64,000 bases of DNA from Sphaerodactylus townsendi (Eukaryota), in assembly GCF_021028975.2 (NCBI RefSeq), contig NC_059439.1, forward strand, positions 23,684,001 through 23,748,000, read 5' to 3'. Shown here piece after piece: positions 1-42,671 of the stretch (positions are counted from its first letter, which is position 1; each line of letters begins with the position of its first letter). Position numbers and translations under genes: made by a program. The notes under the pieces were generated by a model. The model was not told the DNA's origin. It did no database searches and saw only the letters and a list, made by a program, of their open reading frames with translations.

Positions 1-203
1 ACAAGTAATATTACTGAATAGTGGATAATATATGAGATCTAATCAGCTTTTTGCTTATTAAAAAGAGCAGAAGAATTTTTCTTTTACTGCCCCAAAAGGA
101 TCATGGGTAAGATTACTCTCCGTGGCTTTTTGCAACAGGATGTGTTATATATTGTGAGTGCTGGGTGTGAACAAAGATTTCCAATGAGAAAATAGATTTC
201 ATT
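1..203 (+). pseudogene. Relic of a duplicated V2R gene 5' region (intergenic DNA fused to the V2R 5' leader)
   Basis: 1-114 matches ~32265-32375. 115-203 (ctctccgtggctttttgcaacaggatgtg...aaaatagatttcatt) matches 33870-33958, which ends just before the V2R ATG at 33967. Confidence 0.8.
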
Positions 204-2603
204 AAAGGAAACTTGAAGAGTTTCTTTCTTCTCCCCTCCTAACTAAACCCAGGCAAGACTTAATAGCAACAACATCACCAACCCAATTTTTAGAACAGTA
301 TGAGGCACTCTTGGAAACCATTACAGATGAAGTTGCAAGTTACTCAAGTCCCAATGAACCTCCTACTGACAAATTTCTGAACAAGGAGTTCAATAAGGAA
401 TGTAAAATGGTGAAAAATCAGATCAGAAAAATCTACAATACCTTTAAAAGCAGCAAAGCAGCAATCTTACATTGAGAATATTTTTCTCTCAGGTCCCGGC
501 TAATGCAACTACTTGTGAAAACAAACTAAAGATCATCGAATCCCTATGGAACGCTCTAATACAAGCTTCAAGGAGTAACAACACAAGAGTGTTTTGGTCA
601 TTAGTTGCTGGAGCCATGCGCACGTCAACCTTTTTAATGTCTAATATCAACCCCCAGAACTGGTTTACATATTTTCAAAGTGTATTTAAAGGAGACAATG
701 AACCGGTCTTGCAGAACGACCTGACACCTCCTCCAGTCCAGGTGGCTCCTTCCCTGGCCCCAGCATGATCTCAGTCCCTCAGAAATCAGACTATTAATTG
801 CTCAATTGAAACTGTATAAATCACCTGGCCCGGATCTAATGCCCCCAGATTTTTATAAAGCATTTCCAGACTGGTGGGCCCCCCTTCTGGCCGCTCTGTT
901 TACTTTGGTTGACAGGTCAGGTACTATCCCGGGGTCTTGGTTAAATGCAATAATAACACCAATATTCAAAAAGGGTGACCATATGTCACCAGCTAATTAC
1001 AGACCCATCAGCCTTTTATCTGTCTCTGGTAAACTTTATGCCAAACATCTGTTAAATAGGCTATGTACCTGGATCAATGATGGAAAAATTCTTTACCCCA
1101 AGCAAATAGGATTTAAAAAAGGTTGCTCTACATGATCATTGTCTGATCCTCAACCTCCTGCTATTAGAATACAAAACAAGGGGGCGATCTAAGATCTTTG
1201 CTGCCTTTCTGGACCTGAAAAGTGCCTTTGATTCAGTTGTAAGAGACTTGCTGTGGCTTAAGTTAACAGAGATGGGGATCGACGTTAGATTATTACTACT
1301 TATTAAATCTCTCTATTCAAACACAACCTGCCAGATAAAATGTACAAACTCTGGAGACCTAACTCCTAAGATTCCCGTCGTGACAGGTGTTAAGCAAGGC
1401 ATGTGTATTGGCCCCAGTCTTGTTTTAACTTTATTCATTAATGATTTGGTACAAGTGTTTGTCAGATGTTAATGCACACAGCCCAGTTCTTTCAAACAAA
1501 CCCATACCACTCCTACTTTATGCTGATGACGTGATACTGATCTCTAGATCTCAAGTGGGCCTTAAAAGGCTCCTTAGAAAAACTATGGAGTACTGTACAT
1601 CTAACTTCCTGTCCTTAAACCCAGAAAAATCAAAAATTGTCATCTTTTCTAATGTATTTAAGCCTTCTAGATGGCTTATTAATGGGGTTAAGGTTGAACA
1701 CTCCAAGTCCTTTAAATATCTAGGCCTAACCTTCCATCATAAAGCCACATGGGCCAGAGATATTGCTGTAAAAGGAAGTTATCACACTGCATCAGCAGTG
1801 GTAAAGTTTTTTCACACCAGGGGAAGGGGATATGTCCCAGCAGCTCTAAAGGTTTTCAACTCCAAGGTAGTTCAGCAACTTCTCTATGGAGTTCCCTTAT
1901 GGATAACTCCATGGAACAAGTCCGTTGAAAGAATACAATCTGGTGTCCTCTATAAAATACTCGGATTACCACACTCTGTACCATATGCTGTACTATGCTT
2001 AGAAACTGGTCAAAACCTACTTGAAACAAGAGCATGGCTGAATACATTCAAGTATTGGATCAAATTATGTTTTAACTCTGATGTGCGCAGTTTAATATAC
2101 ACCTATTTGCCTCCGAATTGTATCAACTTCTCAAATCAAAAATTTACTCAATAGGTTTATTGCTTGAAGATCTCTGTATGCTGACACCCAGAGAGATTTT
2201 CCGAACCTTAAAAAGTAGACTTCTAGAACAGGAATATCATATCTTGTTGGGGCAAGCAAATAAATCATGCTCACCCCTCTCTGTCGGAATAATACCGGAA
2301 CAGGGGCACATAGCCAAATATCTTGAATTATTAACTGAACCCCAAAAGAGATGGATTATCACAAGGGCCAGATCCAATACCTTCCCATCGGCCATTACAA
2401 AGGGTCGTTACTTATTCATCCCTCTCCAGGATCGGGTTTGTCCACACTGTAAAAATCAAGTAGAGACTCTTGCTCACATTATTCTTGACTGTCCGAGATA
2501 TGTGGGAATTAGGAATTTCTCTCCCAGGCTGGCCCTAGACAAATCTGAAAGTGACTCTGACTGTTCTGTTGTGGAGCTTCTGTTAAACAACACAAATATT
2601 TAA
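204..2603 (+). mobile_element. Degenerate non-LTR retrotransposon (RTE-X-like LINE) ORF: reverse transcriptase plus C-terminal CCHC
   Basis: Frameshifted ORF pieces with KSPGPD, PIFKKGD..NYRPISLL, QIGF, GVKQG, LLYADD, FKYLG and CPHC..ETLAHIILDC motifs. The 3' end is cut off at an aaatatt microhomology with the host flank (compare 16185). Confidence 0.85.
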
Positions 2604-2970
2604 ATCCACCAATTAATTTAAAAAAACTCCTTATTTATCTTTATGGACAGTGGGAAAGAACCACAGTAACAAGAACTGGGAGAAAGTGAGCCAAACAAAT
2701 ATCTGGCTGAATCCAACCCAAAATATTATCAGATAAACAGAGAATCAGTATCTAATAATTCCAGGAAGACTTTCCTAGGTATAAATCCCATTTAATAGAT
2801 ATGAGAAGGATTGTGCATATATCTGCTTAGGACTGCTCCCCGATAGTTGCATTATATAGCAGTTTTGTTATGTTTCAATTTAAAAAAAAGACAGAACTAG
2901 ATGGAACCAGGTGAGTTTCAAGGAGGATGGAGTGTTACTATCTTGGAACTATGATGGAATTCGAAATGGA

Positions 2971-3111
2971 GGCTCCTTCCGCACACGCAAAATAATGCAT
3001 TTTCAAACCACTTTCACAACTGTTTGCTAGTGGATTTTGCTATTCCGCACAGCTTTAAAGAGCACTGAAAGCAGTTTGAAAGTGCATTATTCTGCATGTG
3101 CGGAATGAGCC
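2971..3111. mobile_element. 141-bp palindromic MITE, PIF/Harbinger-type
   Basis: Long TIRs ggcYcYttccgcaca...tgtgcggaatgagcc; 3-bp TSD GGA; empty site at ~16555. Confidence 0.85.
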
Positions 3112-3177
3112 GGATAGATGTATACATTACTGAAACACTTTTCTCATAGTAAAATGAAGCAAGCTGAGGTTATCTTA

Positions 3178-3318
3178 GGCTCATTCCGCACATGCAGAAT
3201 AATGCCCTTTCAAACTGTTTTCAGTGCTCTTTGAAGCTGTGCGGAATTGCAAAATCCACTTGCAAACAGTTGTGAAAGTGATTTGAAAACGCATTATTTT
3301 GCGTGTGCGGAAGGGGCC
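3178..3318. mobile_element. 141-bp MITE, same family, opposite orientation
   Basis: Same TIRs; TSD TTA; empty site at ~16622. Confidence 0.88.
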
Positions 3319-4461
3319 TTAGAAAAAATGAGCAGGATATTTCAAAGTGAAATGCAACTGTTTTTTATTATTTTTGTTAACAAATGCAAGACATATGTCA
3401 TGTAAGAACAATAGCACAGCACAGCGAAACCTTTATTAGGCATAAGTTAAAATCTCTACAATCAATAATTCTGTACATAAGTACAAAATAGTCTAATATC
3501 CAGGTAGTAATAAAATACTATATATACAAAACATCGAATATATGACATATTGCTTAACGTCAGACAGTTAAAATCCATTTACATTAGGGAACGGCTCACG
3601 TTTGTCATTTTATTAAATCACATGTAAGCCCGTGTATTTGTAACTTATGCGACTACCTAAGCTCAGGTTTTTGGTAACATTTGTTGTTTATTACTTCTGC
3701 TAAGAAAGTTGCAACCTTCAGAGTTATTTCAGGGGACCAATCATTTAGTAAATAAGGTACTATGTATGTTGCAGGTAGGGTTGGTAAATGGGGAAAAAAT
3801 TCGGCCCCAGTTCGGATTTGGGCCCAATTCGGATGTATGGGGTCAGATGCCCCCATATCCAAGCCTGCCAGGCTCGGATACACCCGAATTTCCAAGATTC
3901 TCGGATGCTTTTTTATTTTTTTGCTGTTTTTCCCCATTTTGGCCTGCAGGGGGAGCATTGTTAAAGATATCGGCATGAAAATTTCAGGGAATTCATCTTC
4001 CCGAGGTACTGAAATTCTGATCATGCTAAGTTTGGTGCAGTTTGGTTCAGGGGGGCCTATGTTATGGACCCTCAAAGATAGCCCAAATCACCCATTGTTT
4101 CCAATGGGAGCCAATGGAATATAGGGGCTATATTTGAGATCCCATAACTATGGCCCCCCATGAACCAAACTGGCAACACCAAACTTCAAGTGCTATAATC
4201 AGAACAGGCTAATGTCTGAAGATAGCCTTGAAACTCTCCGAGCAGCAGCTATACCTTTAAAAATGCGTCCCCTACAGGCACCCCAGGATTTTTGCACAAG
4301 ATTCTGTGGTTTGCATTGAATTTTTTCAATTGCTTTCAATGGAGGAATTCCTGGGGTGCCTGCGGGGGCGCATTTTTAAAGGTAAGTGGGGTATCTTTTT
4401 TACTGGGGATTGGTTGGGAAACTGGGTGGCAAGGGTGGCATGGGTGGGTGGGTGCTTACAC

Positions 4462-4462
<1 letters not shown>

Positions 4463-4506
<44 letters not shown>

Positions 4507-4512
4507 CGTGCG
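4463..4512. repeat. (TG)n microsatellite
   Basis: About 20 TG units followed by cgtg repeats. Confidence 0.95.
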
Positions 4513-4609
4513 CGGGTCAGGGCTTAGAAGTGGGGGCAACTTTTGGGATGGGAAGGGGGTGCTAAGCTTGGCTGGGGGGGCTTGGACTTGTGTCACCCTC
4601 CCTCTGTGC

Positions 4610-5470
4610 CAAGCAGTTGCCACCACCTGCAGCTTCCAAGCCCTGATCTACACACACAGAGAAGTTGTGTGTGCGTGAGGATCCAGGGACTTGGGAAGCC
4701 GCATGAGGCTAATTTCTTTGGGAAAAGGGGTGTGTCGCGTCTGGATTGGGGCTTGGAGGGGTGACTTTGGGAAAGGGGGGTGTCAAGAGGGTCCAGGAAG
4801 GGTAGATGGTTGCTTGGACTTGAGTCCAAGCATCCATCTACCCTCCCTGGCCACGCTCCAGCTCCCAAGCCCCGGACTTGATCCATCTACTCTCCCTGGC
4901 CACGCTCCAGCTCCCAAGCCCCGGTCTGCACGCACACAGGAGTTGTGTGTGCGTGCAGATTGGGGCTCAGAGGGCGACTTTGGGAAAGGGGGTGTCAAGC
5001 GGGGCCAGGAAGGGTAGATGGTTGCTTGGACTTGAGTCCAAGCATCCATCTATCCTCCCTGGCCAGCTTGACTCCCCTCCAGCTCCCAAGCCCCCGCCTC
5101 GCACTTGGACAGGGCGGATTGGGGGGGCTCCGGAGGGGCGACTTTGGGGAAAGGGGGGGTGTCCAAAGCAGGGCCAGGAAGGGTAGATGGTTTGCCCGGT
5201 CTCCGGTTCAAGCATCCATCTATCCCCCCCTGGCCAGCTTGACACCCTCCAGCTCCCAAGCCCCAGTCTGCACGCTATCACAGGAGTTGTGTGTCGCGTG
5301 AGGATTAAAGGGGTCAGTTCAAGAGAGGAGCTTGACTTACTTTGGGAAAGGGGGGGTGTCAAGCAGGGCCAGGAAGGGTAGATGGTTGCTTGGACTTGAG
5401 TCCAAGCATCCATCTATCCTCCCTGGCCAGCTTGACACCCCCCCCAGCTCCCAAGCCCCAGTCTGCACGG
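4610..5470. repeat. GC-rich minisatellite (~170-210 bp unit, ~4.5 copies) inside the hAT element
   Basis: Recurrent ccaggaagggtagatggttgcttggacttgagtccaagcatccatcta and ccagctcccaagcccc at ~4795, 5005, 5173, 5369. Confidence 0.9.
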
Positions 5471-5767
5471 CGGTGTGTGCTTCCTGCAGCTGCCTGCCTC
5501 TTTAAAGTTTTCCCCCCCGGCTGGCTCGGAAGGGAAGTCCACCTTCGTCTGGAGAGAAGGGGGTGCTGTCTTCGATTGGAGAATATGTTTTAGAGGGGCG
5601 AGCTTGACGGACTCTTGGCTGTCTAAATCTCTCCGAACTAGCGGATCTCGGCCGAACTTGCAGTTCGGCCGATCCGATCCGCCATCTCTAGTTGCAGGTA
5701 GGCTAGGTTTTGTTTTAAGAAGCGGAGTAATATAAATACTTCGTAGGGATGAATAGGACTGACAGTT

Positions 5768-6474
5768 TGAGGGAAGCAGCTAATACTCTCCTGCTATTAA
5801 AAGAACTTTTACTACAACATTTCTGTGTGGTAATAAAACATTTATTAACAACATTGGTTCAAGGTAAACCGAAGCATAAGGTGCAGCATGGGGGTCTGAT
5901 CTTGTGGTATATGTACTGGGCAGCCAATAGTGCTGTCCCCCAGACACCTAAATTTTTCTCAGCACGCCTGCCGATGAAAAATTATAATGCACACTGGAGC
6001 AGCTGTGAGATTCCAGATGGGCGGTCGCCACTTCCTGAAGACTCTTTGCTGCCAGGGGCGCAAGCCATCTACGCCCACGTCTGGCCAGGTGACCCCTTGG
6101 CTTGCTCCACCCCTTGGCTTGCTCCACCCCAAACCTCATGAGGAGGTTCCACCACAGCAGGTCTTTTGCCCGCTGCCCCCCCAGCTAAAGATCAGTCCCC
6201 CATGCGCAAACCTCCGGATAACAACAATAAAGCGCATGCATTAACACAGAACAAAACAGGGAGAGGTGGGTGGGAAACGCGCCTGCTCCAACAAATGAGG
6301 AGGTGGGGAGGCCAAGCTCAGGCCTAAATAGGCCGCCTGGCCCCACCTCCCAAGCTAAAGCCTCGCGAGCCCAGAAGAGCTTGCAAGGCAGGGGGAGGGG
6401 AGAAGGAAGCCATGGAGGCTGTCCCTTCCCCATCAGCAATGGCAGCCGCGGTAAGTCATGGCTGTTCCCTGACA
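5768..6474. mobile_element. Interspersed repeat with short imperfect inverted ends (possibly DIRS-like)
   Basis: Ends gagggaagcagc...gctgttccct; homologous to 44811-45140. Confidence 0.5.
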
Positions 6475-6491
6475 GTTTAGAAGAATATGCT

Positions 6492-6810
6492 GGATTGAAT
6501 CCACTTCATTTAATGGCATGGACACCTTCTCTCTGAGGTTGGTATGCCTTGATATCGTCCTTCCATCACTTTAGAGGGGCAGGAGTTAAGCCTAGCCAGC
6601 ATAAATGCTCTGCGTTGAGATGGGTTATCAAGACTGAAAAGATATTGAGCCATCTTGCCACGAAAAAAGGTTAATTGTAACGATTCAGGCGAGCAGACGG
6701 CTGGTTGTGAGGGTTGAAGCTTTTGCTGTTCCACATCAAAGATTCTTTGTCTAAGGAGCCTAACAATGTACTCATCATTTAAGGATTCAAAGAATTCCAA
6801 TGAGAAGCCT
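6492..6810 (-). mobile_element. RTE-X-like LINE internal fragment
   Basis: ORF 6510-6800 has CSP, RRAFMLARLN..PS...GRY...RRCPC, matching the other LINE copies in the window. Confidence 0.75.
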
Positions 6811-6832
6811 AAGGTTTTATTTTAATTTCTAG

Positions 6833-6972
6833 GGCTGATTCTGCATGGGCCAAAAATAGCAGTATGAAAACGGTGTGAAAACAGTATAAACCCTTTTACA
6901 CCATTTTCAACCCTTTTACACCATTTTCACACAGTTTTCACACTGTTGTTTTTGGTCCACGCGGAATCAGCC
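6833..6972. mobile_element. 140-bp palindromic MITE (second Harbinger-type family)
   Basis: Long imperfect TIRs ggctgattctgcatggg...ccacgcggaatcagcc; TSD TAG. Confidence 0.8.
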
Positions 6973-7195
6973 TAGGTTGGTTAGCCAGGTTGTACTCAGT
7001 GGGTCAGACTTAAAGTGAGATAGGAGCGAACTTTCTTTTGCCTTAAAGAATATTTTCAGCCAGAATCTTTAAAAAGTAATCCACGCTTTTGTTTCCACAC
7101 AATGTAGACCCAGTTCCACACATATTACTGAGTTTGGGATGCATTTTGGAACTCCCAGAAGTTAACTTCCTGCTGGACTCTAACCATCAAGACTT

Positions 7196-8619
7196 CGTTG
7201 AAAGTTTTCAATGCCAAATGTGGAACCAAGCTCCTTTATGGAGCACCTATCTGGATTGAAGCGGCAAACAAAATCTTAAATAGATCTCAATCCCGCTTTT
7301 TTTATAAAATCATGGGACTACCCAACTGTGCTCCATACGCAGCCCTATGCTTAGAACTTGGGCAAATATCCCATGTCACAATGGCTTGGCTGAGGACCAT
7401 CAAATATTGGCTGCACATCCATTTTTCACAAGATCATTCTAGCTTAATCCACTCGATGCTCTCCGACTCGGTAGTTCCCAGATGGACGACGTTGGTGGAA
7501 GAAAGTAAAATTAGCTCTATCTGGCCTCCCCACTAGAGTCACTTTACTCTCTTCAACTTCTACCGGAGGCCTATAATTGCCTGGAAAATCAGGCTGCTGG
7601 AACATGAGAGTACTGCAACATGATAGCTGAAGCGAGGAAAACATGCTCTCCTCTAAATTTGCTTATCCCTTTTGAACAAGGACATACAGCCAACTACCTT
7701 TTCTGGCTTACCAATCCAAGGCACAGAAGAGCAATATCCTTGGCCCGTTTCAATTTAATGCCCTCTATGCTCCTTAAAGGCAGATACCAACGCATAGATA
7801 AACAAAAGAGGCTATGTCCATAGAGACACTGGAGCACACTCTGTTTCATTGTGCAAGATTTGCCAAGATCAGAATGACCCAGCCCATCATTGCTTCACTT
7901 TTATACAATCATTTAACTGATGCTCTTAGGATTCCGTTAATCTTAGATAATCTTGATCCTTATTTCTGTGAAAGCGTAGCAAAATATCTTTTAAAGATTA
8001 TTATAGACGCATAACGCTTAGATGGATACTTCAAGCACTAGATTGCTATCATCATAACAACAACAATGCTGCTTACATTAACTATTTGCTATTGGCACAC
8101 AGTGCCTACCTCTGCCAGCAACCTTTGGGTTCACGGTCCACGGCTCACCCAAAGTCAAATGTGGGTGATTCATTGAGGGATGTCGTAGTTTTGTTAGTGA
8201 TTGCTAGATGGAGTGAGTGACAACTGAAGGCTGTGGCAACCTATGGGAGCCAAATCAATTGTTTGCCCATTTCCTCGCCCCCTATCCCTTGCTCTGTGTT
8301 AGGGTTAGGTGCCACTCTAACAAACTCTGTGTTTTATAGTGGAGTGTTGACACTGTATGCTGTTGTGATGCCTGGGCTCTGTTGGTGGGTTTTTAGTCAG
8401 GTCTGTGGAGAGGTGTATAGGAACGGCACTTTTGATGAGTCCATTTAGACTAAACTATTGATGAGACTCTGAATGGTTGCTGTAACTATCTGTCTTTTAT
8501 GGACAATTGTTTTATTGTCTTATTGTATTTATTGTTTTATTGTATTTATTGTATTTTGGAATGCCAATAAAGGCTATCATCACATCACATCAATGCTTGT
8601 ATAAACATTAAACTAATTT
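7196..8619 (+). mobile_element. 5'-truncated RTE-X-like LINE, probably with a second element nested at ~8060-8590
   Basis: 15-bp TSD taaccatcaagactt (7181-7195 / 8620-8634); ORFs with KVFNAK..LLYGAPIW and ETLEHTLFHC; atgccaataaaggc tail at ~8561. Confidence 0.8.
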
Positions 8620-9595
8620 TAACCATCAAGACTTTCTATGTGAAATGGATGGCAAGGGCTGTCCAGCTGCAACTGTCTTATGGCAACCCCAGGAAAGGAC
8701 TTTCAAGGCAAGTCAGAAGCAGAACTGGTTTGAGAGATTCAACAGATACATGACTGAGAGGAACATTGTCTAACACTCCAAATGTTGGATGCATACTTTC
8801 TTCTAGCCAGACTACAGTTCAGGAAACAGCTAGAATGGGTGGGAATGGTTGAGGGGAAAACAACTCCAAAGCAAGAAAGAACATCAAGATAAGGCATGCC
8901 ACGGTCTGTTTTGCACAGCACAAATAAGGCATCCTGAGAGCACAAAAAAAGGCCTGTTGGGGAGGCACTCTGCACAGCCTTTCCCCCCAAGACATTCTCA
9001 GGACACCTTATTTCAGCCCAAGCAGTCTTATTCTGAAGATGCTGGAAGTCTGGACTACACACACATGCGCGGCAAATAGGCCCTACATTAGAATTCTGGG
9101 AAACGAAAGGAAAAGACACAATTTATTTCATACTGTGTTGATTTTTCAAGCAAGAACTGAGAACAGGGGTTGAAACACTTCAGATTTGGGAGGAAGGATC
9201 CCTTCCAGGGAGGGCAGCTGTTTTATTTGCCTTTCCTTTAACTTTCATGAATGGTAGGCATGTTTACCCTGAATATTTCCTTTTGTAACCCCTCCCCTTT
9301 TTAAAATTTCAAAATCATCCCCATTGGGAATATTAAAGGAAAACTATATAATTCTCTTGAGATTAAAAACAAAGATCAAAAGCCTGGGAATTAAAATCAC
9401 AGAGGTCCTTTCTGATGGGTACACAAGTGAGGGTATTTGCAGTGGCAGCTTCACGATTGTGGAACAATCTCGCCAGAAATGTGTGCTTTCAATCTTTGGA
9501 AGGCTGATGCCAGTTTTATTCAGGAAGGCATATTTTTCACCCAATCTGTTGTAAATTGTGATTTCAATTCAGGGCCTTCTATGGGTTTTATGTAT

Positions 9596-9736
9596 GGCCC
9601 CTTCTGCACGCACAAAACAATGCATTTTCAAACCACTTTCACAACTGTTTGCAAGTGGATTTTGCCATTCCGCACAGTTTCAAAGAGCACTGAAAGCAGT
9701 TTGAAAGTGCATTATTCTGCATGTGCAGAATAAGCC
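9596..9736. mobile_element. 141-bp Harbinger-type MITE in the OR 3' flank
   Basis: TIRs; TSD TAT; empty sites at ~18213 and ~29130. Confidence 0.88.
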
Positions 9737-9850
9737 TATGTTTATGTTCAGCATTCTATTTACATTGTAAAATAGTTCCATATGGTGGAAAGGTGGAGCA
9801 TAAGAGCATCATATAATGTTGGCCCTCCTTGTAATATTTGATCAAAGCTA

Positions 9851-15661: not shown

Positions 15662-15664
15662 GAG

Positions 15665-31522: not shown

Positions 31523-31984
31523 ATGGTTTTAATTTTAAGAACACTGGGAAAGAAAACCTTGTCAGATTACAGAGACACTTAACCACAAATGAAGCAAACT
31601 GACAATATTGGCCATGATTTATAGATATTTACCTTACTGTGAAACATGCATAAACCCAGCTATAACATTGTGATGTGAAGTGACACCTGCATGTAGCTGC
31701 AATGAAAATGCTAGGTGATCAGTATTTTATGTTCCAAATTCAGCACCCAAGACCTTCAGACATTATATATCATTTATGGAATTCTTCAGAATGTTAATGT
31801 AGGTATCAATTCCTCTTCCTAAAAAAAATATTTCAGTCCAAAAATGGGAATGCAGTACCAGGGCCAGCATATAAGAGAACAACATGATTTGGTCATGCTT
31901 TTCCCACAAAGACAACCCTTGACTTTATCAGCACAGCTGGCAATGAAATGCTGGGTGATGTAATTCTTGGCCTTAGCTCAGAGG

Positions 31985-32040
31985 AATTAATGATTAGAAT
32001 TAATGAGGTAGTGAATGTATAATTCATGGCCCATGGGACA
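31985..32040. promoter_or_regulatory. Candidate Lhx2/EBF-type promoter between the divergent OR and V2R genes
   Basis: TAATGA at 31988 and 32001, TAATTC at 32020, CCCATGGGA (EBF CCCNNGGGA) at 32030. Confidence 0.45.
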
Positions 32041-32666
32041 AGTATGAGAACCAACATGGTGTACTGGTTAAGAGCACAGGACTCTAATCTGTAGAACCAG
32101 GTTTAATTTCCTACTGAGCCAGTCAAAGTTCCCTCAAGACTAAAAAAGGAATCCATAACATGCAAATGTTAACAGAACAATGGTAACAATAATTACTGTG
32201 GATATTGAAATTACGGTTTTCAAAAAAAGGGGGAGATATTTGTTAGTAGGTTTCCTTCTGAGAACAAATAATATTATTGAATAGTGGGTAATATATGAGA
32301 TCTAATCAGCTTTGCTTGTTAGAAAGAGCAGAAGAATTTTCTTTTACTGCCCCAAAAGGATCATGGGTAAGATTGCTGTTAACTTGTTTCTGATGCCTAT
32401 GGTGCATAACTCCCAAGAGATGTCCAATGTAGATGAAAGGAGAAATATGAGGGAAAGTGGCATCAAGTCATATCTGGATATTACTGACCGCTTTGGAATA
32501 GGAAGTATTTTTCAAATAGTAGAAACTTGCTCTTCCACCACACATGCTCTGACATTATTTCAGAAAGATTTTCTCACCCTGTTCTTTGACCTCACTGGAA
32601 AAATGTGAAAGACTGATTCGCATGCTGCTAGATGCCTGCATCTGCCTTGTACAAAAGAGAAATTCG

Positions 32667-33328
32667 TGGTGCGTGGTGCGACCGCACTGGAGTCCTGTGT
32701 TCAGTTCTGGTCGCCACATATCAAAAAGGATATTGAAGAGATAGAAAAAGTGCAGAGAGGGGCAACGAGGATGATTGAGGAACTGGAGCACCTTCCTTAT
32801 GAGGAGAGGCTGCAGCGTTTGGGGCTCTTTAGTTTGGAGAGGAGACGTCTGAGGGGGGATATGATTGAAGTCTATAAAATTATGCCTGGGGTAGAAAATG
32901 TTGACAGAGAAATTTTTCTCTCTTTCTCACAATACTAGAACCAGGGGGCATTCATTGAAAATGCTGGGGGGAAGAATTAGGACTAATAAAAGGAAACATT
33001 TCTTCACGCAATGTGTGATTGGTGTTTGGAATATGCTGCCACGGGCGGTGGTGATAGCCACTAACCGGGATAGCTTTAAAAAGGGCTTGGACAGATTTAT
33101 GGAGGAGAAGTCGATCTATGGCTACCAATCTTGATCCTCCTTGATCTCAGATTGCAAATGCCTTAGCAGACCAGGTGCTCAGGAGCAGCAGCAGCACAAG
33201 GCCATTGTTTTTACATCCTGCATGGGAGCTCCCAAAGGCACCTAGTGGGCCCCTGCGAGTAGCAGAGTGCTGGACTAGATGGACTAGATGGACTCAGCAG
33301 GCTTGTTCTTAAGTTCTTATGTTCTTAT
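32667..33328 (+). mobile_element. CR1 LINE 3' fragment
   Basis: [11 protein letters not shown]...[10 protein letters not shown]...[28 protein letters not shown]; gttcttat-type tail. Confidence 0.92.
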
Positions 33329-33966: not shown

Positions 33967-36900
33967 ATGCTGCTGCTGCTCTTTCTTCTGTTTCTGCCTC
34001 AAGCTGTCAGCAAGAATTTGAAGGAACTTTGTAGGGCAACCACTCATCGATATAAAGATGATTATTTAAAGTCAGGAAATCATGTTATTGGTGCAATTTC
34101 ATCTCTGCGTGTGGCGGTTGGTCCAGAAGAGAAGTTTAAGTCTTTGCCCCAGAGTTTCAATAAATATATATACCAGTACGTGAGTATGCAGTTTAAATAA
34201 ACTACAGGCAGTCAGATCTTAAGGATCTTTGCCACAGCATGAGTATCTCAGTGTACATGCTAATATTAAGAGTAGTCCAACCTTATCCCACAATGGTCAA
34301 ACCCTCAAGGCAAAGTGCAGTTTCATCTCAGCATATCATTGTCTGATCAGAAGATATGTTCACATCTTTGCCCCCGAGTTTATATACACACATCATGTTA
34401 TTTAGTTGTTTCTTGTGTTTGATCTTTTCTTCTGCTAATTTGGAGTTCTGGAAATAGAGATGGGAGATTGGAAAAGGCTGTCAATACAAAGAGATGAATG
34501 AAACCTTTACTTCCATTTTAGGTTTGTGAGGAAGAATTATCAGCATGTCCTCACCTTCATTTTTACTGTTGATGAAATCAACAAGGATCCAGATCTCTTA
34601 CCCAATGTCACACTGGGCTTCCGCCTCTATGACAGCCTCTTACGAGGAAGATCAGATTATGACATCACTCTGTCCTTGCTGTCCTCACCAAAAGTAAACA
34701 TCCCTAATTTCAACTGTGCAAAGCAATACAATATGTCAGCAGTTGTTGGAGGACTTAGCTCTGAAGCTTCCATCCAGATGGCTACCATCTTTGACCTCTA
34801 CAAGATCCCTCAGGTATGGATGTACAGTGTACAAAGTCCTAACACAAAATAACAGTCGACATTTTTTCATGTTATTCCATGCTAACAGTGATGTAGTAAA
34901 TAAATTCTGACAACTTAGCACCGTCCAGGCTTTTCCAAAAGAGGCTATGGCTTGTTCCCTATATGACCATGCAAACAGACTACTAAGCCCAGAGATTTCT
35001 CAAAGTCTGTGCATAGCCATGACAAAGGTGTGATGTTTTGACACTCCTGCCTGAGATGAGACTAGGGCTTTGCTCATCAGTCAGCTAATAGGTGGAGAAT
35101 TTCTTCATCTGTCCTTTTCAACTGCTCTTTGGATATCATTTGCAGGCTTCAAGCAGCATGCAGGTACAAGAAAACAGATTGGCAAGCAACGTAACACTCT
35201 TGGTACCCATACTGGGAAGGAGTTGGTCTAAGCAATGCCTTGCTTAACTTCTAATCTAGTGGTTTCCTTACATATCTGTTGTTTAATGGTGAAATAAAGG
35301 CTCCACATGATGGTGCAGGAATGGCAGTAACAGAGCTTATAATGTTTGAATGTAGATATGAACGTTCACCACTAGTAGCAAAATTTCTTTTACAAGTGAC
35401 AGAACTTTCTAAGTAACGTCCAGTGCTAGATATAATCCTGTCTGTGTTTTGAATGTATTCTTGATTTGTACTTCACAAATGTCTGGCAATGCTCTGGAGC
35501 CTATTTTATATACCTAATAAAGGTTGTTGTTAATATTTCCAACCTATATTATTGGAAAAATATTTTTGACCGTTGCACTATTATTACAAGAATTATCCAT
35601 GGCCCTGTCCACAGAAAATCCAAAAAAAAAAATATTTTCAATCCCTCATATCATGATTAATGTCTGCACTCACCCTCTCAAAACAAATACTGAACACATT
35701 TTAAAAACCTTTCAGCCTCAAGGATTATTTGAAAAGGGGATTCATTTAAAACATGTTGAGGCTGGAAATAAAACATTTGAGGGTAAAAACAATGCCGAAG
35801 TCCATGAAGGAAACAGAAGATGGGAGCATTCTAATCAAGGACCCTTGAGGATAATCTCAGCAAAACAGAGTTCCACAGCTGCGTGAAACTCACAGTAAAT
35901 ACTGGTTGTGGTTGGTTTTCCAGGCTGTGTGGCTGTGATCTGATGGATCTTGTCCCTAACATTTCACTGGCATCTGTGGCTAACATCTTCAGAGGTGTAT
36001 CACAGAGGGAAGTCTGTTACACACTGTGTCCAGTGAGAAGGAAATGTTTAGTGGGGTATATATTGTCCATGTTCCAGGGTGGGGAACCAATCAGTAAGTA
36101 TTTGGGTGGAACTTGCTATGCACAGATGTGGTTGATGGTACTGTACTGCAGGTGGGGTTTTTCAGTCCAGGGAGTGATTTACATTTGCAGGCTTTCGACA
36201 ATACATTGCAGTAAATACTACTTTTCTGACATAAAGATTGCACAGGTTTAGCAACAATGTTCCTGTAGTTCTTCTAATAATAGCAGCAGTAATTATTTTA
36301 CTATCACTCTTAAGAGTGGTAGTACCAGTAGTAGCAGGAACAGTGGTAAAGTGGTAATAGTATTAGCAAATCATTCCTACCACTCAAAACATTCTGGCCC
36401 CTTCCGCACACGCAAAATAATGAGTTTTCAAACCACTTTCACAACTGTTTGCAAGTGGATTTTGCTATTCCGCACAGCTTTAAAGAGCACGGAAAGCAGT
36501 TTGAAAGTGCATTATTCTGCATGTGCGGAATGAGCCTCTGTAATTTGTTTTTCATTAATGCTTCCAGGATGCCCTGTCTGAAGATCCTGCATGTTTTCAG
36601 CATGTCTGAAGTCAGGAAACTGGAGAGCTATTCTCAATATGCATAATTTCAGGGAGACAATTGTCAGGTTGTAATAAAATGCCTGTTGTTTTTCTACAGC
36701 TCCCTTATGCTCACCCCTCACTGAGTAATAAAATTCAGTTCCCCTTTTTTTACCAAATGGTTCCAAAGGAAGCTGCTCAGTTAGAAGGAATAGTGGAATT
36801 GATCGGATATTTCAAATGGACGTGGATTGGCCTCGTCGTTTCTGACAATGACAATGGAGAACTGTTTGCTCAAACTATTACCCTCTCACTCAGTAGACGG

Positions 36901-39900
36901 GGAATATGTATTGCCTTCACAGAAAAGGTCCCAGTACCCTTGCATGATTCCTATACTGAATATGGTCAAAAAATATTTTTTATGGGAAATATTTTAAGGA
37001 CATTGTTTGCCACAAAAGCCAATGTGATTATTGCATATGGAGACACTTACTCCATGCATAGTTTACAAATACTTGTATACACCAATGAAGAAATAACAAA
37101 GCGACAGATGCAGAGGAGGATTTGGATCACAACAGCCCAGTGGGACTTATCTTCAAGGATTGTTCGAACAGACTGGAATACCAGGTTCTTCCACGGCACC
37201 TTGTCTATAGCAGACCACAGAAATGATGTACCAGGATTTCAGAGCTTCCTCCGGGGGTTTAAGCTTTACCAACACCCAACCTCTTTAATGCGACAGTTCT
37301 GGGATTTTGTATTTTCCTGTAGAAGCTCAAAACCTGAAAGCTCTGTACAAAATGTAAGGAAATGCACAGGAGAGGAAAAGCTGGAGAGTCTTGGAGGGGA
37401 TGTGTTTGAAATGCACATGTCTGGTCAGAGCTACAGCATCTACAATGCAGTCTATGCCTTTGCACATGCTTTAAATGCTTCTTCCACATTCAGATACCAA
37501 ACGATGAGCAAAAACCCAATTCTGGACCATCGCACAAAGCAGCCCTGGGAGGTAATGTTTGACTTTTAATGTCTGACTTTTCCTTCTCAGCAATGTGCCA
37601 GTGAGAAAGATCACAGTGCTGTGAACAAAAATCAAAAATGTACTGAATCTTTGGTATCTCTTTCTCTCTCTGTTATGCATATGTAACCTCAGCTTGTGGG
37701 TTCTGTGGGCAGTACTTGGAAGGAGTTGCAAAGAACCAAATTTAAACAAAACAGTTTACTTTTCTTTACAAATAACATTAAACATCAACATTTAACATTA
37801 CAATTCAAGGTCCTGTTCAGGTTGCATTTCAAGTCCTTCTAGTTACAGTCTACTGATACTGCCAAGTCCAATTCTTCTTTGCAAGTGGGTTGGCTCCTGA
37901 AGACTCCAAGGGCTTGATGAACAGGATGCAACATGAATGAAGGTTTCCAGGAGAACTCTCACCCATTACAACCACAAAAAGAAACCCTTAACAAGGTGTT
38001 AAGGGCTTATAGAAATCAAGGTCCAAGTCTGGTAGCCTTGTCTTCTCCAAAGAGCTCTGCAGCCTTTCTGCTGCTCTGAGTCTCCACCCCCTTACTGGTT
38101 CAACCCATTCTGGGCATGGGGGTTACACATACGCTATTGCCTTTAATAATTCCCCCTAGTGTTTTTAATTTTCATTTTTGTAGATCGTTGCGGCTTTTCA
38201 GAAAATAATATATGAGCTCCATTTATGTAGTTGAGAAGAGCATTTAGTCAAAATAGCAAAATGAAGTTCATGAAGGATGCTCCACGGCAGAGTGGGAATT
38301 CAAAAGTGGGTCTCACAGATTCTAGTTTGGCACAGTATTCACCAGAAAATGCTGGTTCACACTTTCTAATAAACCAATTCAAGAGTCAGAATATTTCAAG
38401 CTCTTGGAATTCTGTGGCATCCAGCGTGGTTTAGTATTTAAGAGCTGATGGCTACTAATCTGGAGAACCAGGTTTTATTCTCCACTACTCCACTTGAGTG
38501 GCTGAGACTTATCTGGTGAACCAGATGCATATCACACTCCTACATACCTGCTGGGTGATACTGGACTAGTCACAATTCTTCGGAACTCTCTCAGCTTCAC
38601 CTACCTCACAAGGTGTCTGCTGCGGGGAGAGGAAGTGAAAGGAGCTTGTAAGTCATCTTGACTCTCCTAACAGGAGAGAAAGGTGGGGTATAAATCCAAA
38701 CTCCTCCTCCTCTGCTCTTGCTCCTCCTCCTTCTCTTCCTCTTCTTCTTCTTGAGGAACGATGCTGGATTCATACTTGAGGAATGATACTGGATTCATAC
38801 TCAGATTCACAGTACATGAATGCACTGGATACTGCATTCATGTTTGTAGCTTCTGAAGTTTTGCCTTCCCATTTAGCTTCATCCATGTCTGCAAAAACTG
38901 CATTTCAACAACAGTGTTGGGGAGGAGGTATATTTCAATGAACAACAGGAATGGCCAATTGGATATGACATCGTAAACTGGGTCAATTTCCCCAATAAGT
39001 CCTTCATCCCTGTAAGAGTTGGAATGGTGAATCCCTGGACTTCAACTAAACAAAGATTTACCATCAAGAGTGATGCTATCATATGGCCTAAAAGATTTAA
39101 CCAGGTGAGCTCCCTATATTTTAACATCTTTGGACTTACTGTTCTTTTTTCACCAACCATTATTATTATAATTCTCATTGCCATTAGTGTCATCATCAAC
39201 AATTTCTTCATCATTGTTACTATTATAGTTGTTGTTGTTGTTGTTGTTAAGGATAAGAGCCCCATGGCATGGAATGGTAAGCTGCAGTACTGCAGTCAAA
39301 GCTCTGTTCATGACCTCTGTTTGATACTGATGGGAATTGGTTTCAGGTAGCCAGCTCAAGGTTGACTCAGCCTTCCAAGTTCAGTGAACTGAGTACCCAG
39401 ATTGCTGGGAGTAAAGCAAAGATGACTGGGCAAACCACCCCATAATCAAAGTCTGCCTAATAAATATTGCAATGGGACATTACCCCATGGGTCAATAGTG
39501 GTATTCCACAAAATGAGCGTCGCTGTCGTTTTTGTCCTGATACAACTGATACACTTTCTCATATGCTGCTTCATTGTTCAAAGTACAACAACATCAGAAC
39601 CGATTTGAGAACTGTGTTACCAACAGGATTTATGCTCCTTTCTGATAAAATAAAAATGGCTAAGCTTCTAAATAGCTCTAGTGTTGAAAACTCTGAAGCT
39701 GTTGCTAGGTTTTTGCTCTGTGTACTGCAAGTTGAGCAATAATGATCTTTTTATTGTATTTGAAATTATTGGCACTGGTTTTATGCCTAATAAAGGTTTT
39801 GGATTTGGATTTGGGTCAATAGTGACTCAGACCTTGCACAGAGGACAATCTTCAGATGGTTTCATTATTTCTCTTGGGAACTGGTTTCCATTTTGAAGCT

Positions 39901-42671
39901 ATTAGGGCCAAGGAGATCCAGCACTACTAAACTGCAAAATAAACCCAAAAGCAAACCACTTCTTGCGTCAGATTGTGCTGTTATACACTGAGCTTATTAT
40001 CTGGCAACACGCAGCTAAGACTCATGAAACTCAGCCCTTGCTTCTCCATTCCTCTACACCAGTGGTGGCGAACCTTTGGCACTCCAGATGTTATGGACTA
40101 CAATTCCCATCAGCCCCTGCCAGCATTGGCAATTGGCCATACTGGCAGGGACTGATGGGAATTGTAGTCCATAACATCTGGAGTGCCAAAGGTTTGCCAC
40201 CACGGCTCTACACAATGTAGAATGTATACCAATGATTCAATTAATGTACATTGTATGTTTTTGTATTATGTGCTGTTACGTTGCTTCTGACTTATGGCAA
40301 CTTTCTAAACTAATGACCATTAAAATGTCCTACCTTTGCCTGGAAATCTCAGGTTAGTCCAATCTCATCAGATAGCAGAATCTAAAAAGACTTGGCCCTC
40401 GCTACAATTTGGATGGTATACAATTAAGGAATATAAGGGTCATGCCTTGGAGGCTTGGAATGGCAAGCCACCTCTGAACATCTCCTGCCTTTAAAACCCT
40501 ACGATGACAGTATATCTGAGCTGTGACATGATGGTCAAAAAAGCCCTATCCGTAGTATGGATGGCCATTACTAGCTTTTTTTCATCTGAGCTTCCAGGGC
40601 AAACAGGTTTGGCCATGGCTAGGACTTGGATGGGAGACCACTACAGAAATCCAGGGTTGCTATCCAGAGGCAGGTAACAGTGAACCACCTGTTTGTATTG
40701 TCTTAAAAACCCTCAGCTTCATTGAAATACTCAAATCCCCTCACCACATTGAGATGAGTATCCAGGAAGGCACAAGAATATCCTAGTCATTACCTTAAAT
40801 GAAACCATATTTCTTTGCATTATGATTAGACCTTGCCTCATTCCCTGTGTACTGAGAGATGCCATCCTGGATACAGCAGAAAAGTTCTCAGGGGAAAAAA
40901 TTCATCTTGCTGCTATGATTGTTCTCAGTGCCCAGAAGGGACAATTTCAAACCAGACAGGTATGTGGTTTCCATGTTTATAATAATAAAAATTTTTGTTG
41001 TCCATCTGTCCAAAAAACCCCATCTGTGACAAGAAATCCAACAAATACAGCACCTTATACAACAAAACACAAACAATGTTAGCAACATCATATATTGAAC
41101 TAGAAAAACAGAAATAGAAGCTGATATTGGCTGTAAGTTAAATAAACTCAACAGGAATACAATGCAGATTTTATGTGCAGCCTATAAAATCTTTTAAAAA
41201 TGGACTCCAATCTGGAGAACTAGTTTTGATTCCCAACTCTTCCCCATGAATGGTGGACTCTAATCTGATGAACCAGGTATGTTTCCCAACATGAAGCCTT
41301 CTGGGTTACTCTGGACTAGTCACAGTTGTCTTTGATCATTCTCATCCTCACCTACTTCATAAGATGTCTGTTGAGGAGACAGAAAGGGAAGGAGGTTGTA
41401 ATCTGCTTTGAGACTCCTTACAGGACAGAAAAACTGGATATAAATCCAAAGTAGTCTTCTTATTGTTCCTTTAAAATACTGGTGGAAAGGTAGGGCAGCT
41501 ATTTCAGAGTAAAGAAACCAAACTGATGTTGAAGGGTCCTCTTTCTACAGAGGATCATAAGGCAAATTGAACAGACTTGACATTTGAATTTTTTGGATGG
41601 ACAGAGAAGCATTGTCTTCATCACATCTATATCTTCTCTCAGGCAGTAAATCTGCTCTCTTTTCCAGTACCACTTTGCCAGCAAACACAGAGTATATATC
41701 AGGGATGTACTGTTGGCAGGATTTACCTGCTTTTTAAGCTGATCTCCCATTCCTTTTCTGTTCAGATGCATATCAATGTATCCTGTGCCCAGATGATGAG
41801 CATCCAAATGAGAACCAAAATGGATGCATCCCTAAAGTTATAACTCATCTTGCCTACAGTGAGCCATTGGGAATCAGTTTGGCTTTTGCTTCTCTCTCCT
41901 TTTCTCTACTCGCCATTGTTGTCCTTGGAACCTTTGTGAAATATAAAAACACACCCATTGTCAGAGCCAACAACCGGGATCTTACCTACCTCCTCCTGAT
42001 TTCCATCTTGCTTTGCTTGCTTTGCATTTTTTTGTTCATGGGACAACCCAACCAGGTGACCTGCCTTCTTCAACAGGCGGCTTTTGGTAGTGCATTTTCT
42101 TTTGTAATGTCTTGTGTCTTGGCCAAAACCATCACCGTGGTTCTGGCATTCATGGCCACAAGCCCAGGAAACACAGCAAGGAAATGGCTGGGGAAATACA
42201 CAATTACATTATCCTGGTTTGCTCTCTTGATTCAAGTTGGCATCTGGTACTCGATCTGGCTCAGTACTTCTCCAAGCACCATTCCCAGACCTTGACAAGT
42301 TCTCGCAATCTGGACAAATCATAGTGGAGTGCAATGAAGGCTCAGTCACCATGTTTTACATTGTCTTGGGTTACATGGGCTTTCAGGCCAGCGTCAGCTT
42401 CTTGGTGGCCTTCCTGGCCAGGAAGCTGCCAGATACTTTCAATGAAGCCAAGTTCATCACCTTCAGCATGTTGGTGTTCTGCAGTGTCTGGATCTCCTTT
42501 GTTCCAACCTACCTGAGCACCAAAGGGAAATACATGGTGGCTGTGGAGATCTTTTCTATCTTGGCTTCCAGTGCTGGATTGTTGGGTTGCATATTTGCCC
42601 CTAAAATGTATATCATTTTGCTCAGGCCAGACATAAACACAAGAGACCAGTTCTTTAGGAAAAAAAGATAA
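33967..42671 (+). CDS. Vomeronasal type-2 receptor (V2R, class C GPCR), six exons: 33967-34175, 34522-34813, 36700-37551, 38877-39104, 40830-40959, 41766-42671; indel cluster at ~42190-42285 (possible pseudogene)
   Basis: Signal peptide [12 protein letters not shown]; [14 protein letters not shown]; FKWTWIGL; [11 protein letters not shown]; YDIVNW; Cys-rich CHPG..CCYDC..CPEG; [14 protein letters not shown]; [24 protein letters not shown] sites give consistent phases 2,0,0,0,1. Confidence 0.93.
35903..36207 (-). mobile_element. Penelope-like retroelement relic with a degenerate minimal hammerhead motif
   Basis: Minus strand 35955-35995 reads cct-CTGAAGA-tgttagccacagatgccagt-GAAA-tgtt-agg; the relic ends gctttcgacaatacatt. 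Confidence 0.6.
36396..36536. mobile_element. 141-bp Harbinger-type MITE in V2R intron 2
   Basis: TIRs; TSD TCT. Confidence 0.88.
37682..38127 (-). mobile_element. Solo LTR (446 bp) in V2R intron 3
   Basis: tgtaacc...ggttaca termini; 4-bp TSD cata (37678-37681 / 38128-38131). Confidence 0.8.
38420..38752 (+). mobile_element. tRNA-derived squamate SINE
   Basis: A/B-box-like head, gctgggtga..ctagtcac core, taaatccaaa followed by a (ctc/ctt)n tail; same family at 41200-41460, 48368-48660(-) and 51765-52052. Confidence 0.75.
39501..39811 (+). mobile_element. RTE-X-like LINE 3' end nested in a Sauria-type SINE relic (~39270-39850)
   Basis: 13-bp TSD tgggtcaatagtg; near-identical to 13015-13333; [13 protein letters not shown] motif. 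Confidence 0.88.
40060..40205. mobile_element. 146-bp palindromic hAT MITE
   Basis: Near-perfect hairpin cagtggtggcgaacc...ggtttgccaccacgg; 8-bp TSD ctctacac. Confidence 0.9.
40352..40715 (+). mobile_element. Two degenerate 5S rRNA-derived SINE relics
   Basis: aggacttggatgggagacc and atctcatcagat..gaatctaa resemble the 5S internal control region, followed by an RTE-like ggcaagccacctctg tail. Confidence 0.6.
41200..41460 (+). mobile_element. tRNA-derived SINE
   Basis: ggactc..atctggagaac head; same body as 38420. Confidence 0.7.

What the first reader, a model, noticed from the sequence alone, without database searches (positions are those of the whole stretch)
1..42671. The tandemly duplicated module was an OR+V2R head-to-head cassette; V2R relics survive in each OR unit
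Seen: 115-203 copies the V2R leader (33870-33958). 15391-15661 and 21741-22012 copy V2R intron 2 (34927-35197). Each relic is fused to sequence matching the OR-V2R spacer (32260-32413). There are two different deletion junctions (unit 0 versus units 1/2), and in unit 0 a LINE starts right where the V2R ATG region would be. Known: ORs (class A, main olfactory epithelium) and V2Rs (class C, vomeronasal) usually expand in separate clusters. Inference: at least the 5' part of the V2R was amplified together with the OR and was then lost by at least two independent events, while the ORs were kept.
Basis: partly seen in the sequence, partly recalled or inferred. Interest (0 to 1): 0.8.

Follow-up and report, generated by a model that had tools for sequence, protein, structure and literature searches.

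The report
V2R scraps inside gecko OR repeats
In Townsend's dwarf gecko, a smell-receptor gene was copied in tandem several times, and each copy carries a short non-coding scrap of the neighbouring vomeronasal receptor gene. This shows that the copied block ran into that neighbour, which is a real but ordinary by-product of segmental duplication.

Summary
Three minus-strand OR10C1-like units lie in the window, and a fourth spacer starts upstream of it. Each unit ends in spacer homologous to 32249-32413. That spacer is fused either to 89 bp of the V2R 5' flank (115-203) or to 275 bp of V2R intron 2 (15388-15661 and 21738-22012).

The pieces are low-copy in public contigs, whereas true repeats nearby are 100 to 100,000 times deeper. 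They are as diverged as the spacer beside them. The 32413|34927 joint also occurs in a second sample and in a related organism. So they are neither dispersed repeats nor haplotype artefacts.

No V2R exon survives in any unit. The simplest history is one tandem duplication whose right breakpoint fell in V2R intron 2. That gave a truncated, non-functional V2R head, which unequal crossing-over propagated and deletions plus a LINE then trimmed. A junction made by template switching, which never copied any exon, is not excluded.

"ORs kept" is only partly true. OR2 carries a 1-nt frameshift. The V2R itself is frameshifted in exon 6 and is not annotated. Gekko and Eublepharis have no V2R at the orthologous site.

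The scan noted OR-V2R adjacency elsewhere in this genome (s1-753600, s1-748464); I did not test those notes.

The parts
1..117 (.). End of the spacer of the unit whose OR lies upstream of the window (S-1). Homologous to 32264-32377.
   Evidence: Homology continues 149 nt upstream of the window in L001.
115..203 (+). Relic a: a copy of the V2R 5' flank from -97 to -9 (33870-33958). It is joined to the spacer with a 3-nt overlap (ACT).
   Evidence: K2P 0.071 against the V2R copy.
204..2593 (+). LINE ORF2 fragment (reverse-transcriptase domain to CCHC knuckle), truncated at both ends. It has several frameshifts and no 3' UTR or tail, so its right edge is a deletion breakpoint.
   Evidence: RVT_1 match, open frames, junction sequence at 2593|2594.
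2594..9850 (.). X0: 3' flank of OR0, with insertions at 2971-3111, 3174-3318, 3414-8620 and 9596-9736. Homology to the other units starts at their positions 16185 and 22521.
9851..10789 (-). OR0, an intact OR10C1-like olfactory receptor of 312 aa.
   Evidence: 7tm_4 match, E 8e-51. Annotated gene in GCA_021028975.2. Named homologues.
15213..15380 (.). End of spacer S0, homologous to 32249-32413.
15388..15661 (+). Relic J1: a copy of V2R intron 2 (34924-35198).
   Evidence: K2P 0.106 to J3 and 0.045 to J2.
15662..15864 (.). Repeat elements directly after J1: a palindromic element (15662-15756) and half of a dispersed ~147-bp element (15782-15864).
18311..19249 (-). OR1, intact, 312 aa, 93.6% identical to OR0.
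21563..21730 (.). End of spacer S1, homologous to 32249-32413.
21738..22012 (+). Relic J2: a copy of V2R intron 2 (34924-35198).
29244..30183 (-). OR2, otherwise full length but with a 1-nt insertion (TT to TTT) near codon 43. It is an apparent pseudogene, or an assembly indel.
   Evidence: 7tm_4 match on the 275-aa open frame.
30184..32413 (.). Spacer S2 between OR2 and the V2R. It is orthologous to the OR upstream region of Gekko and Eublepharis up to about 32042.
32655..33326 (+). 5'-truncated CR1-type LINE with an 8-mer repeat tail, inserted only in this copy. Public contigs from other copies lack it.
   Evidence: Word depth of 10^6-10^7 and the joint 32654->33326. Sequence. Similar copy at L003 435-888. 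The CR1 family name is my own recognition and was not tested.
33967..42671 (+). V2R (vomeronasal type-2 receptor 26-like). Exons: 33967-34179, 34535-34813, 36700-37551, 38877-39104, 40830-40959, 41766-42671. Splice sites are canonical. There is one frameshift in exon 6 near 42255-42275. It is not called as a gene.
   Evidence: ANF_receptor and 7tm_3 matches split over two frames. Cysteine-rich exon. Splice sites. Homologues. No gene call.
34924..35198 (+). J3: the parent copy of relics J1 and J2, lying 111-385 nt into V2R intron 2. Homology ends at 35198, which is the right-hand breakpoint of the duplicated block.

Best explanation
The window comes from Sphaerodactylus townsendi, chromosome record CM037628.2, about 23.684-23.748 Mb.

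A V2R came to lie head-to-head with an OR10C1-like gene, about 3 kb away before a CR1 element inserted. A non-homologous tandem duplication then copied a block running from the OR's distal 3' flank, through the OR and the spacer, into the V2R. It stopped in intron 2 at 35198.

The new unit therefore carried a V2R head: promoter, exons 1-2 and 385 bp of intron 2. That head could never encode a receptor. Unequal crossing-over between units multiplied the array. The useless V2R heads then decayed along two paths.

- In one lineage a deletion of about 1.8-2.5 kb joined spacer position 32413 to about 34924. This junction was duplicated again, giving J1 and J2.
- In another lineage a deletion joined 32377 to 33870. 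A LINE landed 8 nt before the ATG. A further deletion then removed the LINE's 3' end and everything up to position 16185-equivalent of the next unit.

Shown: the homologies, the junctions, the low copy number, the equal divergence, and the truncation of the LINE at both ends. Inferred: that exons 1-2 once lay between the surviving pieces, and the order of events.
For: - Matches and junctions.
- Relics diverge like the adjoining spacer. J1-J2 is 0.045 against 0.043 for the S0 and S1 spacer ends. J1-J3 and J2-J3 are 0.106 and 0.081 against 0.070 and 0.091 for the spacer ends. Relic a is 0.071 against 0.056.
- Low copy number. Summed word depth in run X12 is 136-380 over J3 and 425 over 33824-33937. 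Single perfect-match contigs have 60-86, and real repeats have 10^4-10^7.
- The joint 32413->34927 is present in two samples of the window's organism and in a related organism.
- The relics occur nowhere else in the window or in the gecko loci L002 and L003.
- Homology to the V2R ends at 35198, although the next 107 bp of the intron are low-copy.
- The LINE's open frame runs to the junction at 2593 with no 3' end. At least one deletion therefore did act at this junction.
- The a-type junction holds sequence that the J-type lacks, and the reverse is also true. Both must derive from a fuller common ancestor, unless two independent non-homologous duplications had nearly the same end points.
- All three ORs are co-orthologues of one Gekko gene: 87% nucleotide identity, against 78% to its neighbour. 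Synonymous divergence is 0.03-0.05 among the copies and 0.33-0.47 to the orthologues.
Against: - No V2R coding sequence survives in any unit, so the presence of exons 1-2 is inferred only.
- The two supposed deletions start just 36 bp apart in the spacer (32377 and 32413), which is an unexplained coincidence.
- The a-type junction is seen only in the assembly. It was not among the joints listed.
- The unit upstream of the window could not be read beyond 149 nt.
- Depth from contigs is only a rough guide to copy number.
Confidence: 0.6

Rival explanations
1. Complex junctions made by replication template switching (FoSTeS/MMBIR type). While the OR block was being duplicated, the polymerase copied a short nearby stretch (275 bp of V2R intron 2, or 89 bp of the V2R 5' flank) before resuming at the start of the unit. 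V2R exons were never part of the repeat.
For: - The relics are short, non-coding, in direct orientation and taken from within 1.5-2.5 kb of the spacer breakpoint.
- There is microhomology at the junctions: ACT at 115-117, and an AACT-like motif at 15380-15390.
- No exon relic exists.
- It would explain why both junctions leave the spacer within 36 bp of each other, if that site is a fork-stalling spot.
Against: - It needs two independent non-homologous duplications with almost the same unit limits on both sides. Once one duplication exists, unequal crossing-over is the expected route, and it copies the existing junction.
- The a-type junction also holds a LINE truncated at its 3' end. A deletion, or capture of a LINE piece, must be added anyway.
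Confidence: 0.2
2. A complete OR+V2R cassette, with a full-length and possibly functional V2R, was the amplified unit. Each extra V2R was later removed almost entirely.
For: - Earlier notes of this scan report an OR and a V2R duplicated together 556 kb away (s1-753600, not tested here).
- Public contigs show further copies, 82-87% alike, of 32137-32619 and of 33777-34108 outside the window. Related spacer and V2R-head sequences therefore exist elsewhere.
Against: - There is no trace of exons 3-6 or of the V2R 3' flank in any unit.
- Homology stops at the same intron-2 base (35198) in both J copies and then passes into the OR 3' flank.
- It needs at least one more large deletion per lineage than the best explanation.
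Confidence: 0.1
3. The matches are dispersed repeats that inserted independently, or the units are haplotypes assembled in tandem by mistake.
For: The region is rich in real repeats: CR1, LINE fragments and a ~147-bp palindromic element with about ten copies in the window.
Against: - The relic segments have 2-6 times single-copy word depth, against 10^2-10^5 times for real repeats.
- They occur only at homologous positions.
- Units differ by 4-10% and by kilobase-sized insertions, far more than alleles would.
- The J-type joint and the intact V2R version coexist in each of three runs from two organisms.
Confidence: 0.03

Closest known systems
Tandem olfactory receptor arrays that grow by segmental duplication and unequal crossing-over
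   Same: The units are 6-15 kb and share one orientation, with one single-exon OR per unit. Non-coding divergence is 4-10% and coding divergence is lower. Similarity between units is mosaic, as expected from recombination. Intact genes and pseudogenes are mixed.
   Different: The repeat unit reaches into a neighbouring gene of another receptor class, so every junction carries a scrap of that gene.
Partial gene copies at segmental duplication breakpoints (truncated gene relics that are non-functional from the start)
   Same: The breakpoint lies inside an intron of the neighbour. Only the 5' part could have been copied, and it decayed by deletion and retroelement insertion.
   Different: The decay has gone so far that only 89 bp and 275 bp of non-coding sequence remain and no exon is left. 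The former presence of exons is therefore inferred.
Chromosomal arrays in squamates that hold both OR and V2R genes (rattlesnake, PMC12400810, figure 1 legend)
   Same: Both receptor families sit in large tandem arrays on the same chromosomes. Here a V2R lies between two OR arrays.
   Different: That paper considers only full-length genes and, in the text I read, does not describe an OR repeat unit containing V2R sequence. Whether its array is truly interleaved was not verified.
Duplication junctions with templated insertions (FoSTeS/MMBIR)
   Same: Short pieces from nearby sequence sit at duplication junctions with microhomology.
   Different: Two different junctions would need two independent events with near-identical limits. 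One junction also holds a LINE fragment truncated at both ends.

Membership tests
Olfactory receptor (class A GPCR, Pfam 7tm_4) | A single-exon open frame of about 310 aa that matches 7tm_4 and 7tm_1 over its full length | tested here: met
   OR0 E 8e-51 and OR1 E 7e-50. The best named homologues are OR10C1-like proteins of geckos at 84-85% identity. OR2 matches but has a 1-nt frameshift.
V2R (class C GPCR, vomeronasal type 2) | Six-exon gene with an ANF_receptor ligand-binding domain, a cysteine-rich (NCD3G) exon and a 7tm_3 last exon | tested here: met
   ANF_receptor in exons 2 and 3. Cysteine pattern in exon 5 found by eye and by regular expression; this exon was not scanned against Pfam in its own frame. 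7tm_3 positions 1-142 and 139-251 lie in two frames of exon 6. Canonical splice sites. Exon 3 homologues are named vomeronasal type-2 receptor 26-like.
V2R (class C GPCR, vomeronasal type 2) | An uninterrupted reading frame, meaning a functional gene | tested here: not met
   The exon lengths sum to 2608 nt, which is not a multiple of 3. The frame changes near 42255-42275. No gene is called there in the record. An assembly error is not excluded.
Tandem segmental duplication array | Head-to-tail units with colinear homology across the gene, both flanks and a shared junction | tested here: met
   One search gives the homology chains for units 2594-15380, 15388-21730 and 21738-32413. The two J-type junctions are alike apart from point differences. 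A fourth spacer lies at -149..117.
   tblastn of all V2R exon peptides against the window at E<=10 finds only the parent gene. Only non-coding pieces are shared.
   Low copy number, divergence equal to the flanks, conserved order, and absence elsewhere.
   There is no V2R exon within 10 kb upstream of the orthologous OR in Eublepharis macularius (L002) or Gekko japonicus (L003). The OR spacer is conserved up to window position ~32042.
Dispersed repeat (transposable element) | Many copies at unrelated loci | tested here: not met
   This concerns the relic segments only. See (depth; no other copies). The contig depths are semi-quantitative.

The most novel reading that the evidence does not exclude
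Head-to-head OR-V2R pairs that share a spacer are a recurrent, once-functional unit of amplification across this gecko's mixed chemoreceptor region. That would couple the growth of main-olfactory and vomeronasal receptor repertoires, perhaps through a shared bidirectional control region. The relics here would then be the decayed end of that process.
Probability: 0.1. Interest if true: 0.65.

Novelty: new member of a known kind. Interest (0 to 1): 0.3.

Why it matters
The relics act as a time-stamp. The V2R was already next to the OR before the OR array grew. The pair is absent at the orthologous site of two other gecko families, so it is most likely a gain in the Sphaerodactylus lineage.

This gives a worked example of how mixed OR/V2R neighbourhoods arise and decay in squamates. 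It also provides junction markers (32413|34924 and 32377|33870) that can date the array across Sphaerodactylus species.

It does not show that receptors of the two classes are amplified as working pairs. The mechanism is ordinary segmental duplication with collateral damage to a neighbouring gene.

Tried and rejected
- **Dispersed-repeat reading:** rejected by contig depth and by the absence of other copies.
- **Haplotype mis-assembly:** rejected by 4-10% divergence, by large structural differences, and by the J-type joint coexisting with the intact version in three runs.
- **The 275-bp piece as an old part of the OR 3' flank later captured by the V2R intron:** rejected. It is absent from the Gekko and Eublepharis OR flanks. 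It would also require V2R exons 1-2 to have been inserted exactly between the spacer and the piece.
- **The a-type junction as simply the empty site of a later insertion in the V2R-proximal copy:** rejected. Only 32655-33326 is a repeat (CR1). 32414-32654 and 33422-33869 are low-copy, and units 1 and 2 share 32378-32413.
- **V2R exon or 3'-flank relics in the units or in the second OR array:** searched for and none found.
- **Reading the flank upstream of the window:** looking up the OR genes yielded only 149 extra bases. No other close paralogue of OR0 is on record: the 90% cluster holds two sequences, and OR0 and OR1 are 93.6% identical.
- **Fetching close V2R paralogues:** the exon-3 search can only see proteins of 166-528 aa. 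Its best hits were 64-66% identical fragments from short contigs.
- **Literature searches for OR-V2R cassette duplication in geckos or squamates:** no such description found.
- **Joined V2R model:** Exons were handled one by one.
Full report
**Source.** Looking up OR0 places the window on GenBank assembly GCA_021028975.2, record CM037628.2, at about 23,684,001-23,748,000. A paper identifies that accession as Townsend's dwarf gecko, Sphaerodactylus townsendi (PMC11797025).

**Gene content.** Three OR10C1-like olfactory receptor genes lie on the minus strand.
- OR0 (9851-10789) and OR1 (18311-19249) are intact 312-aa genes, 93.6% identical to each other.
- OR2 (29244-30183) is full length except for one extra T near codon 43.

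A six-exon V2R lies on the plus strand, head-to-head with OR2.
- Its ATG is at 33967. The exons are 33967-34179, 34535-34813, 36700-37551, 38877-39104, 40830-40959 and 41766-42671, all with canonical splice sites.
- Exons 2-3 match ANF_receptor. Exon 5 has the cysteine-rich pattern. Exon 6 matches 7tm_3, but in two frames, with profile positions 1-142 and 139-251.
- The exon lengths sum to 2608 nt, so there is a single frameshift, near 42255-42275.
- The record has no gene call there.
- Exon 3 finds proteins named vomeronasal type-2 receptor 26-like.
- I searched the exons one by one and did not build or search a joined model.

A second, unrelated OR array follows on the plus strand from 45195 onward.

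**The observation.** Alignments show the following.
- All four spacer ends are colinear up to 32377.
- The copy at the window start then jumps to 33870-33958. This is the V2R 5' flank from -97 to -9, not the signal-peptide leader.
- The copies at 15213 and 21563 continue to 32413 and then jump to about 34924-35198, which lies 111-385 nt into V2R intron 2.
- The 149 bases upstream of the window continue the spacer homology. The first relic therefore belongs to a real unit whose OR lies outside the window.
- The LINE fragment begins at 204-206, equivalent to 8 nt before the V2R ATG.

**Repeat or artefact?** I laid public Logan contigs from four runs on 32000-35400 at 80% or greater likeness. Two samples were of the organism that holds 81% of the sampled words, and two were related organisms holding 46% and 30%.

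| Stretch (run X12) | Summed word depth |
|---|---|
| Single perfect-match contigs | 60-86 |
| Intron-2 piece (34850-35191) | 136-380 |
| Bin covering most of the 5'-flank piece (33824-33937) | 425 |
| 32000-32113 | about 43,000 |
| 35306-35400 | about 40,000 |
| CR1 at 32684-33367 | 5 to 19 million |

- Contig depth is a rough measure, but the contrast spans several orders of magnitude.
- A contig with the joint 32413->34927 is present in both samples of the window's organism and in one related organism, alongside perfect-match contigs of the intact V2R version.
- Within the window and in the gecko loci L002 and L003, the relic sequences occur only at the homologous positions.
- The units differ by 4-10% and by kilobase-sized insertions. 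They are neither alleles nor dispersed repeats.
- The a-type joint (32377->33870) was not among the joints listed, so it rests on the assembly alone.

**Age.** Kimura distances show that the relics diverge like the spacer next to them.

| Relic comparison | K2P | Matching spacer comparison | K2P |
|---|---|---|---|
| J1-J2 | 0.045 | S0 end - S1 end | 0.043 |
| J1-J3 | 0.106 | S0 end - S2 end | 0.070 |
| J2-J3 | 0.081 | S1 end - S2 end | 0.091 |
| Relic a - V2R flank | 0.071 | S-1 - S2 end | 0.056 |

- The pieces therefore travelled with the unit.
- Similarity between units is mosaic. OR-proximal parts group units 0 and 2, while junction parts group the two J-type junctions. This is what unequal crossing-over produces.
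- Among the ORs, dS is 0.03-0.05 and dN/dS is 0.3-0.7. Against the Gekko and Eublepharis orthologues, dS is 0.33-0.47. The array is young relative to the split between gecko families.
- The J-type joint predates the split from the related organism, which I estimate at about 2.5% divergence from its 46% share of 31-mers. That figure is my own calculation.

**What was copied.**
- No V2R exon relic exists anywhere else in the window (tblastn, E<=10).
- Homology to the V2R stops at 35198, although the next 107 bp of the intron are low-copy.
- After the J pieces come two repeat elements, and then the OR 3' flank. That flank is orthologous to the Gekko OR flank from about 16095.
- So the right end of the duplicated block lay in V2R intron 2. 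At most a V2R head (promoter, exons 1-2, 385 bp of intron 2) was copied, and it could never have made a receptor.
- The CR1 at 32655-33326 has a typical 8-mer tail, and contigs from other copies lack it. The deletions were therefore probably about 0.8 kb and 1.8 kb when they occurred.
- The LINE at 204-2593 has its open frame running into the junction, with no 3' UTR or tail. Its right edge is a deletion breakpoint, which shows that deletion did act at this junction.

**Weighing the models.**
- The a-type junction contains 33870-33958, which the J-type lacks. The J-type contains 32378-32413 and the intron piece, which the a-type lacks. Neither can derive from the other.
- Either both derive from a fuller junction (spacer, V2R head, J, then the next unit) that unequal crossing-over spread and deletions later trimmed, or two independent non-homologous duplications with nearly identical limits each picked up a short templated piece.
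- I keep the template-switching model at about 0.2. Reasons are that no exon survives and that the two spacer breakpoints lie only 36 bp apart, which is odd for independent deletions.
- A full-length V2R in each unit (about 0.1) has no positive evidence in the window.

**Other geckos.**
- The orthologous OR of Eublepharis macularius (L002) and Gekko japonicus (L003) shares non-coding sequence with the window's units. This covers the 3' flank through the OR and up to spacer position ~32042.
- Neither locus has any V2R exon within 10 kb upstream. Eublepharis has another OR head-to-head at 9.4 kb.
- From the accepted family tree (my own knowledge), a gain of the V2R neighbour in the Sphaerodactylus lineage is more parsimonious than two losses.
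- Contigs 82-87% alike covering 32137-32619 and 33777-34108 show that further, older copies of the spacer end and of the V2R head exist elsewhere in the genome. I could not fetch them.
- Earlier notes of this scan report OR-V2R neighbours 73 kb upstream and a co-duplicated OR+V2R 556 kb upstream. These are leads that I did not test.

**Verdict.**
- The inference that V2R-derived sequence was amplified with the OR is supported.
- The stronger reading of an OR+V2R gene cassette is not supported.
- The claim that ORs were kept while V2Rs were lost is weakened for three reasons. The copied V2R part was non-functional from the start. OR2 is frameshifted. The parent V2R is itself frameshifted.
- This is an ordinary outcome of segmental duplication in a chemoreceptor region. 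It is useful as an evolutionary marker but is not a new mechanism.

Noticed in passing
window 41766-42671 (about 42255-42275): The V2R is intact in exons 1-5 and at all splice sites, but has one frameshift in the 7TM exon. The record has no gene call for it. It is either a very recent pseudogene or an assembly indel.
   Followed up: partly
window 30050-30060 (OR2, minus strand): OR2 differs from OR0 and OR1 by a single extra T (TT to TTT) near codon 43 and is otherwise open. Both members of the head-to-head OR2-V2R pair therefore carry a single frameshift.
   Followed up: partly
window 2971-3111, 3174-3318, 9596-9736, 13798-13954, 20698-20843, 31378-31523, 36396-36536, 54613-54763, 60517-60657: A palindromic element of about 147 bp with about ten copies in the window matches in both orientations. 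It sometimes occurs as an inverted pair around a short unit segment (2971-3318). It looks like a MITE.
   Followed up: no
window 32655-33326: A CR1-type LINE 3' fragment with an 8-mer repeat tail has inserted between OR2 and the V2R promoter. Contigs in three runs join 32654 to 33326, so other copies of this spacer lack it.
   Followed up: partly
window 23299-23637 and 26296-26635; also 4001-6000: A 340-bp direct repeat (95% identical) brackets a GC-rich (0.54) insert of about 2.7 kb in the 3' flank of OR2. A related GC-rich piece lies inverted at 14654-15212. Another GC-rich insert with internal tandem repeats lies at 4730-5470.
   Followed up: no
window 45195-64000: A second OR array on the plus strand has at least four genes, about 50-60% identical to OR10-type proteins, in units of about 5-5.6 kb. 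It includes a 441-bp tandem duplication of the 3' end of the third gene (56662-57533). No V2R 3'-flank relic is seen in it.
   Followed up: partly
L002 1-10000 and L003 1-10000: Eublepharis and Gekko japonicus have no V2R exon within 10 kb upstream of the orthologous OR10C1-like gene. Eublepharis has another OR head-to-head at 9.4 kb, and Gekko has a tandem paralogue 8.8 kb downstream.
   Followed up: yes
window 15662-15756 and 22013-22107: A 95-bp near-perfect hairpin element sits exactly at the right edge of both intron-2 relics. Whether it inserted at the duplication junction or helped to create it is unknown.
   Followed up: no
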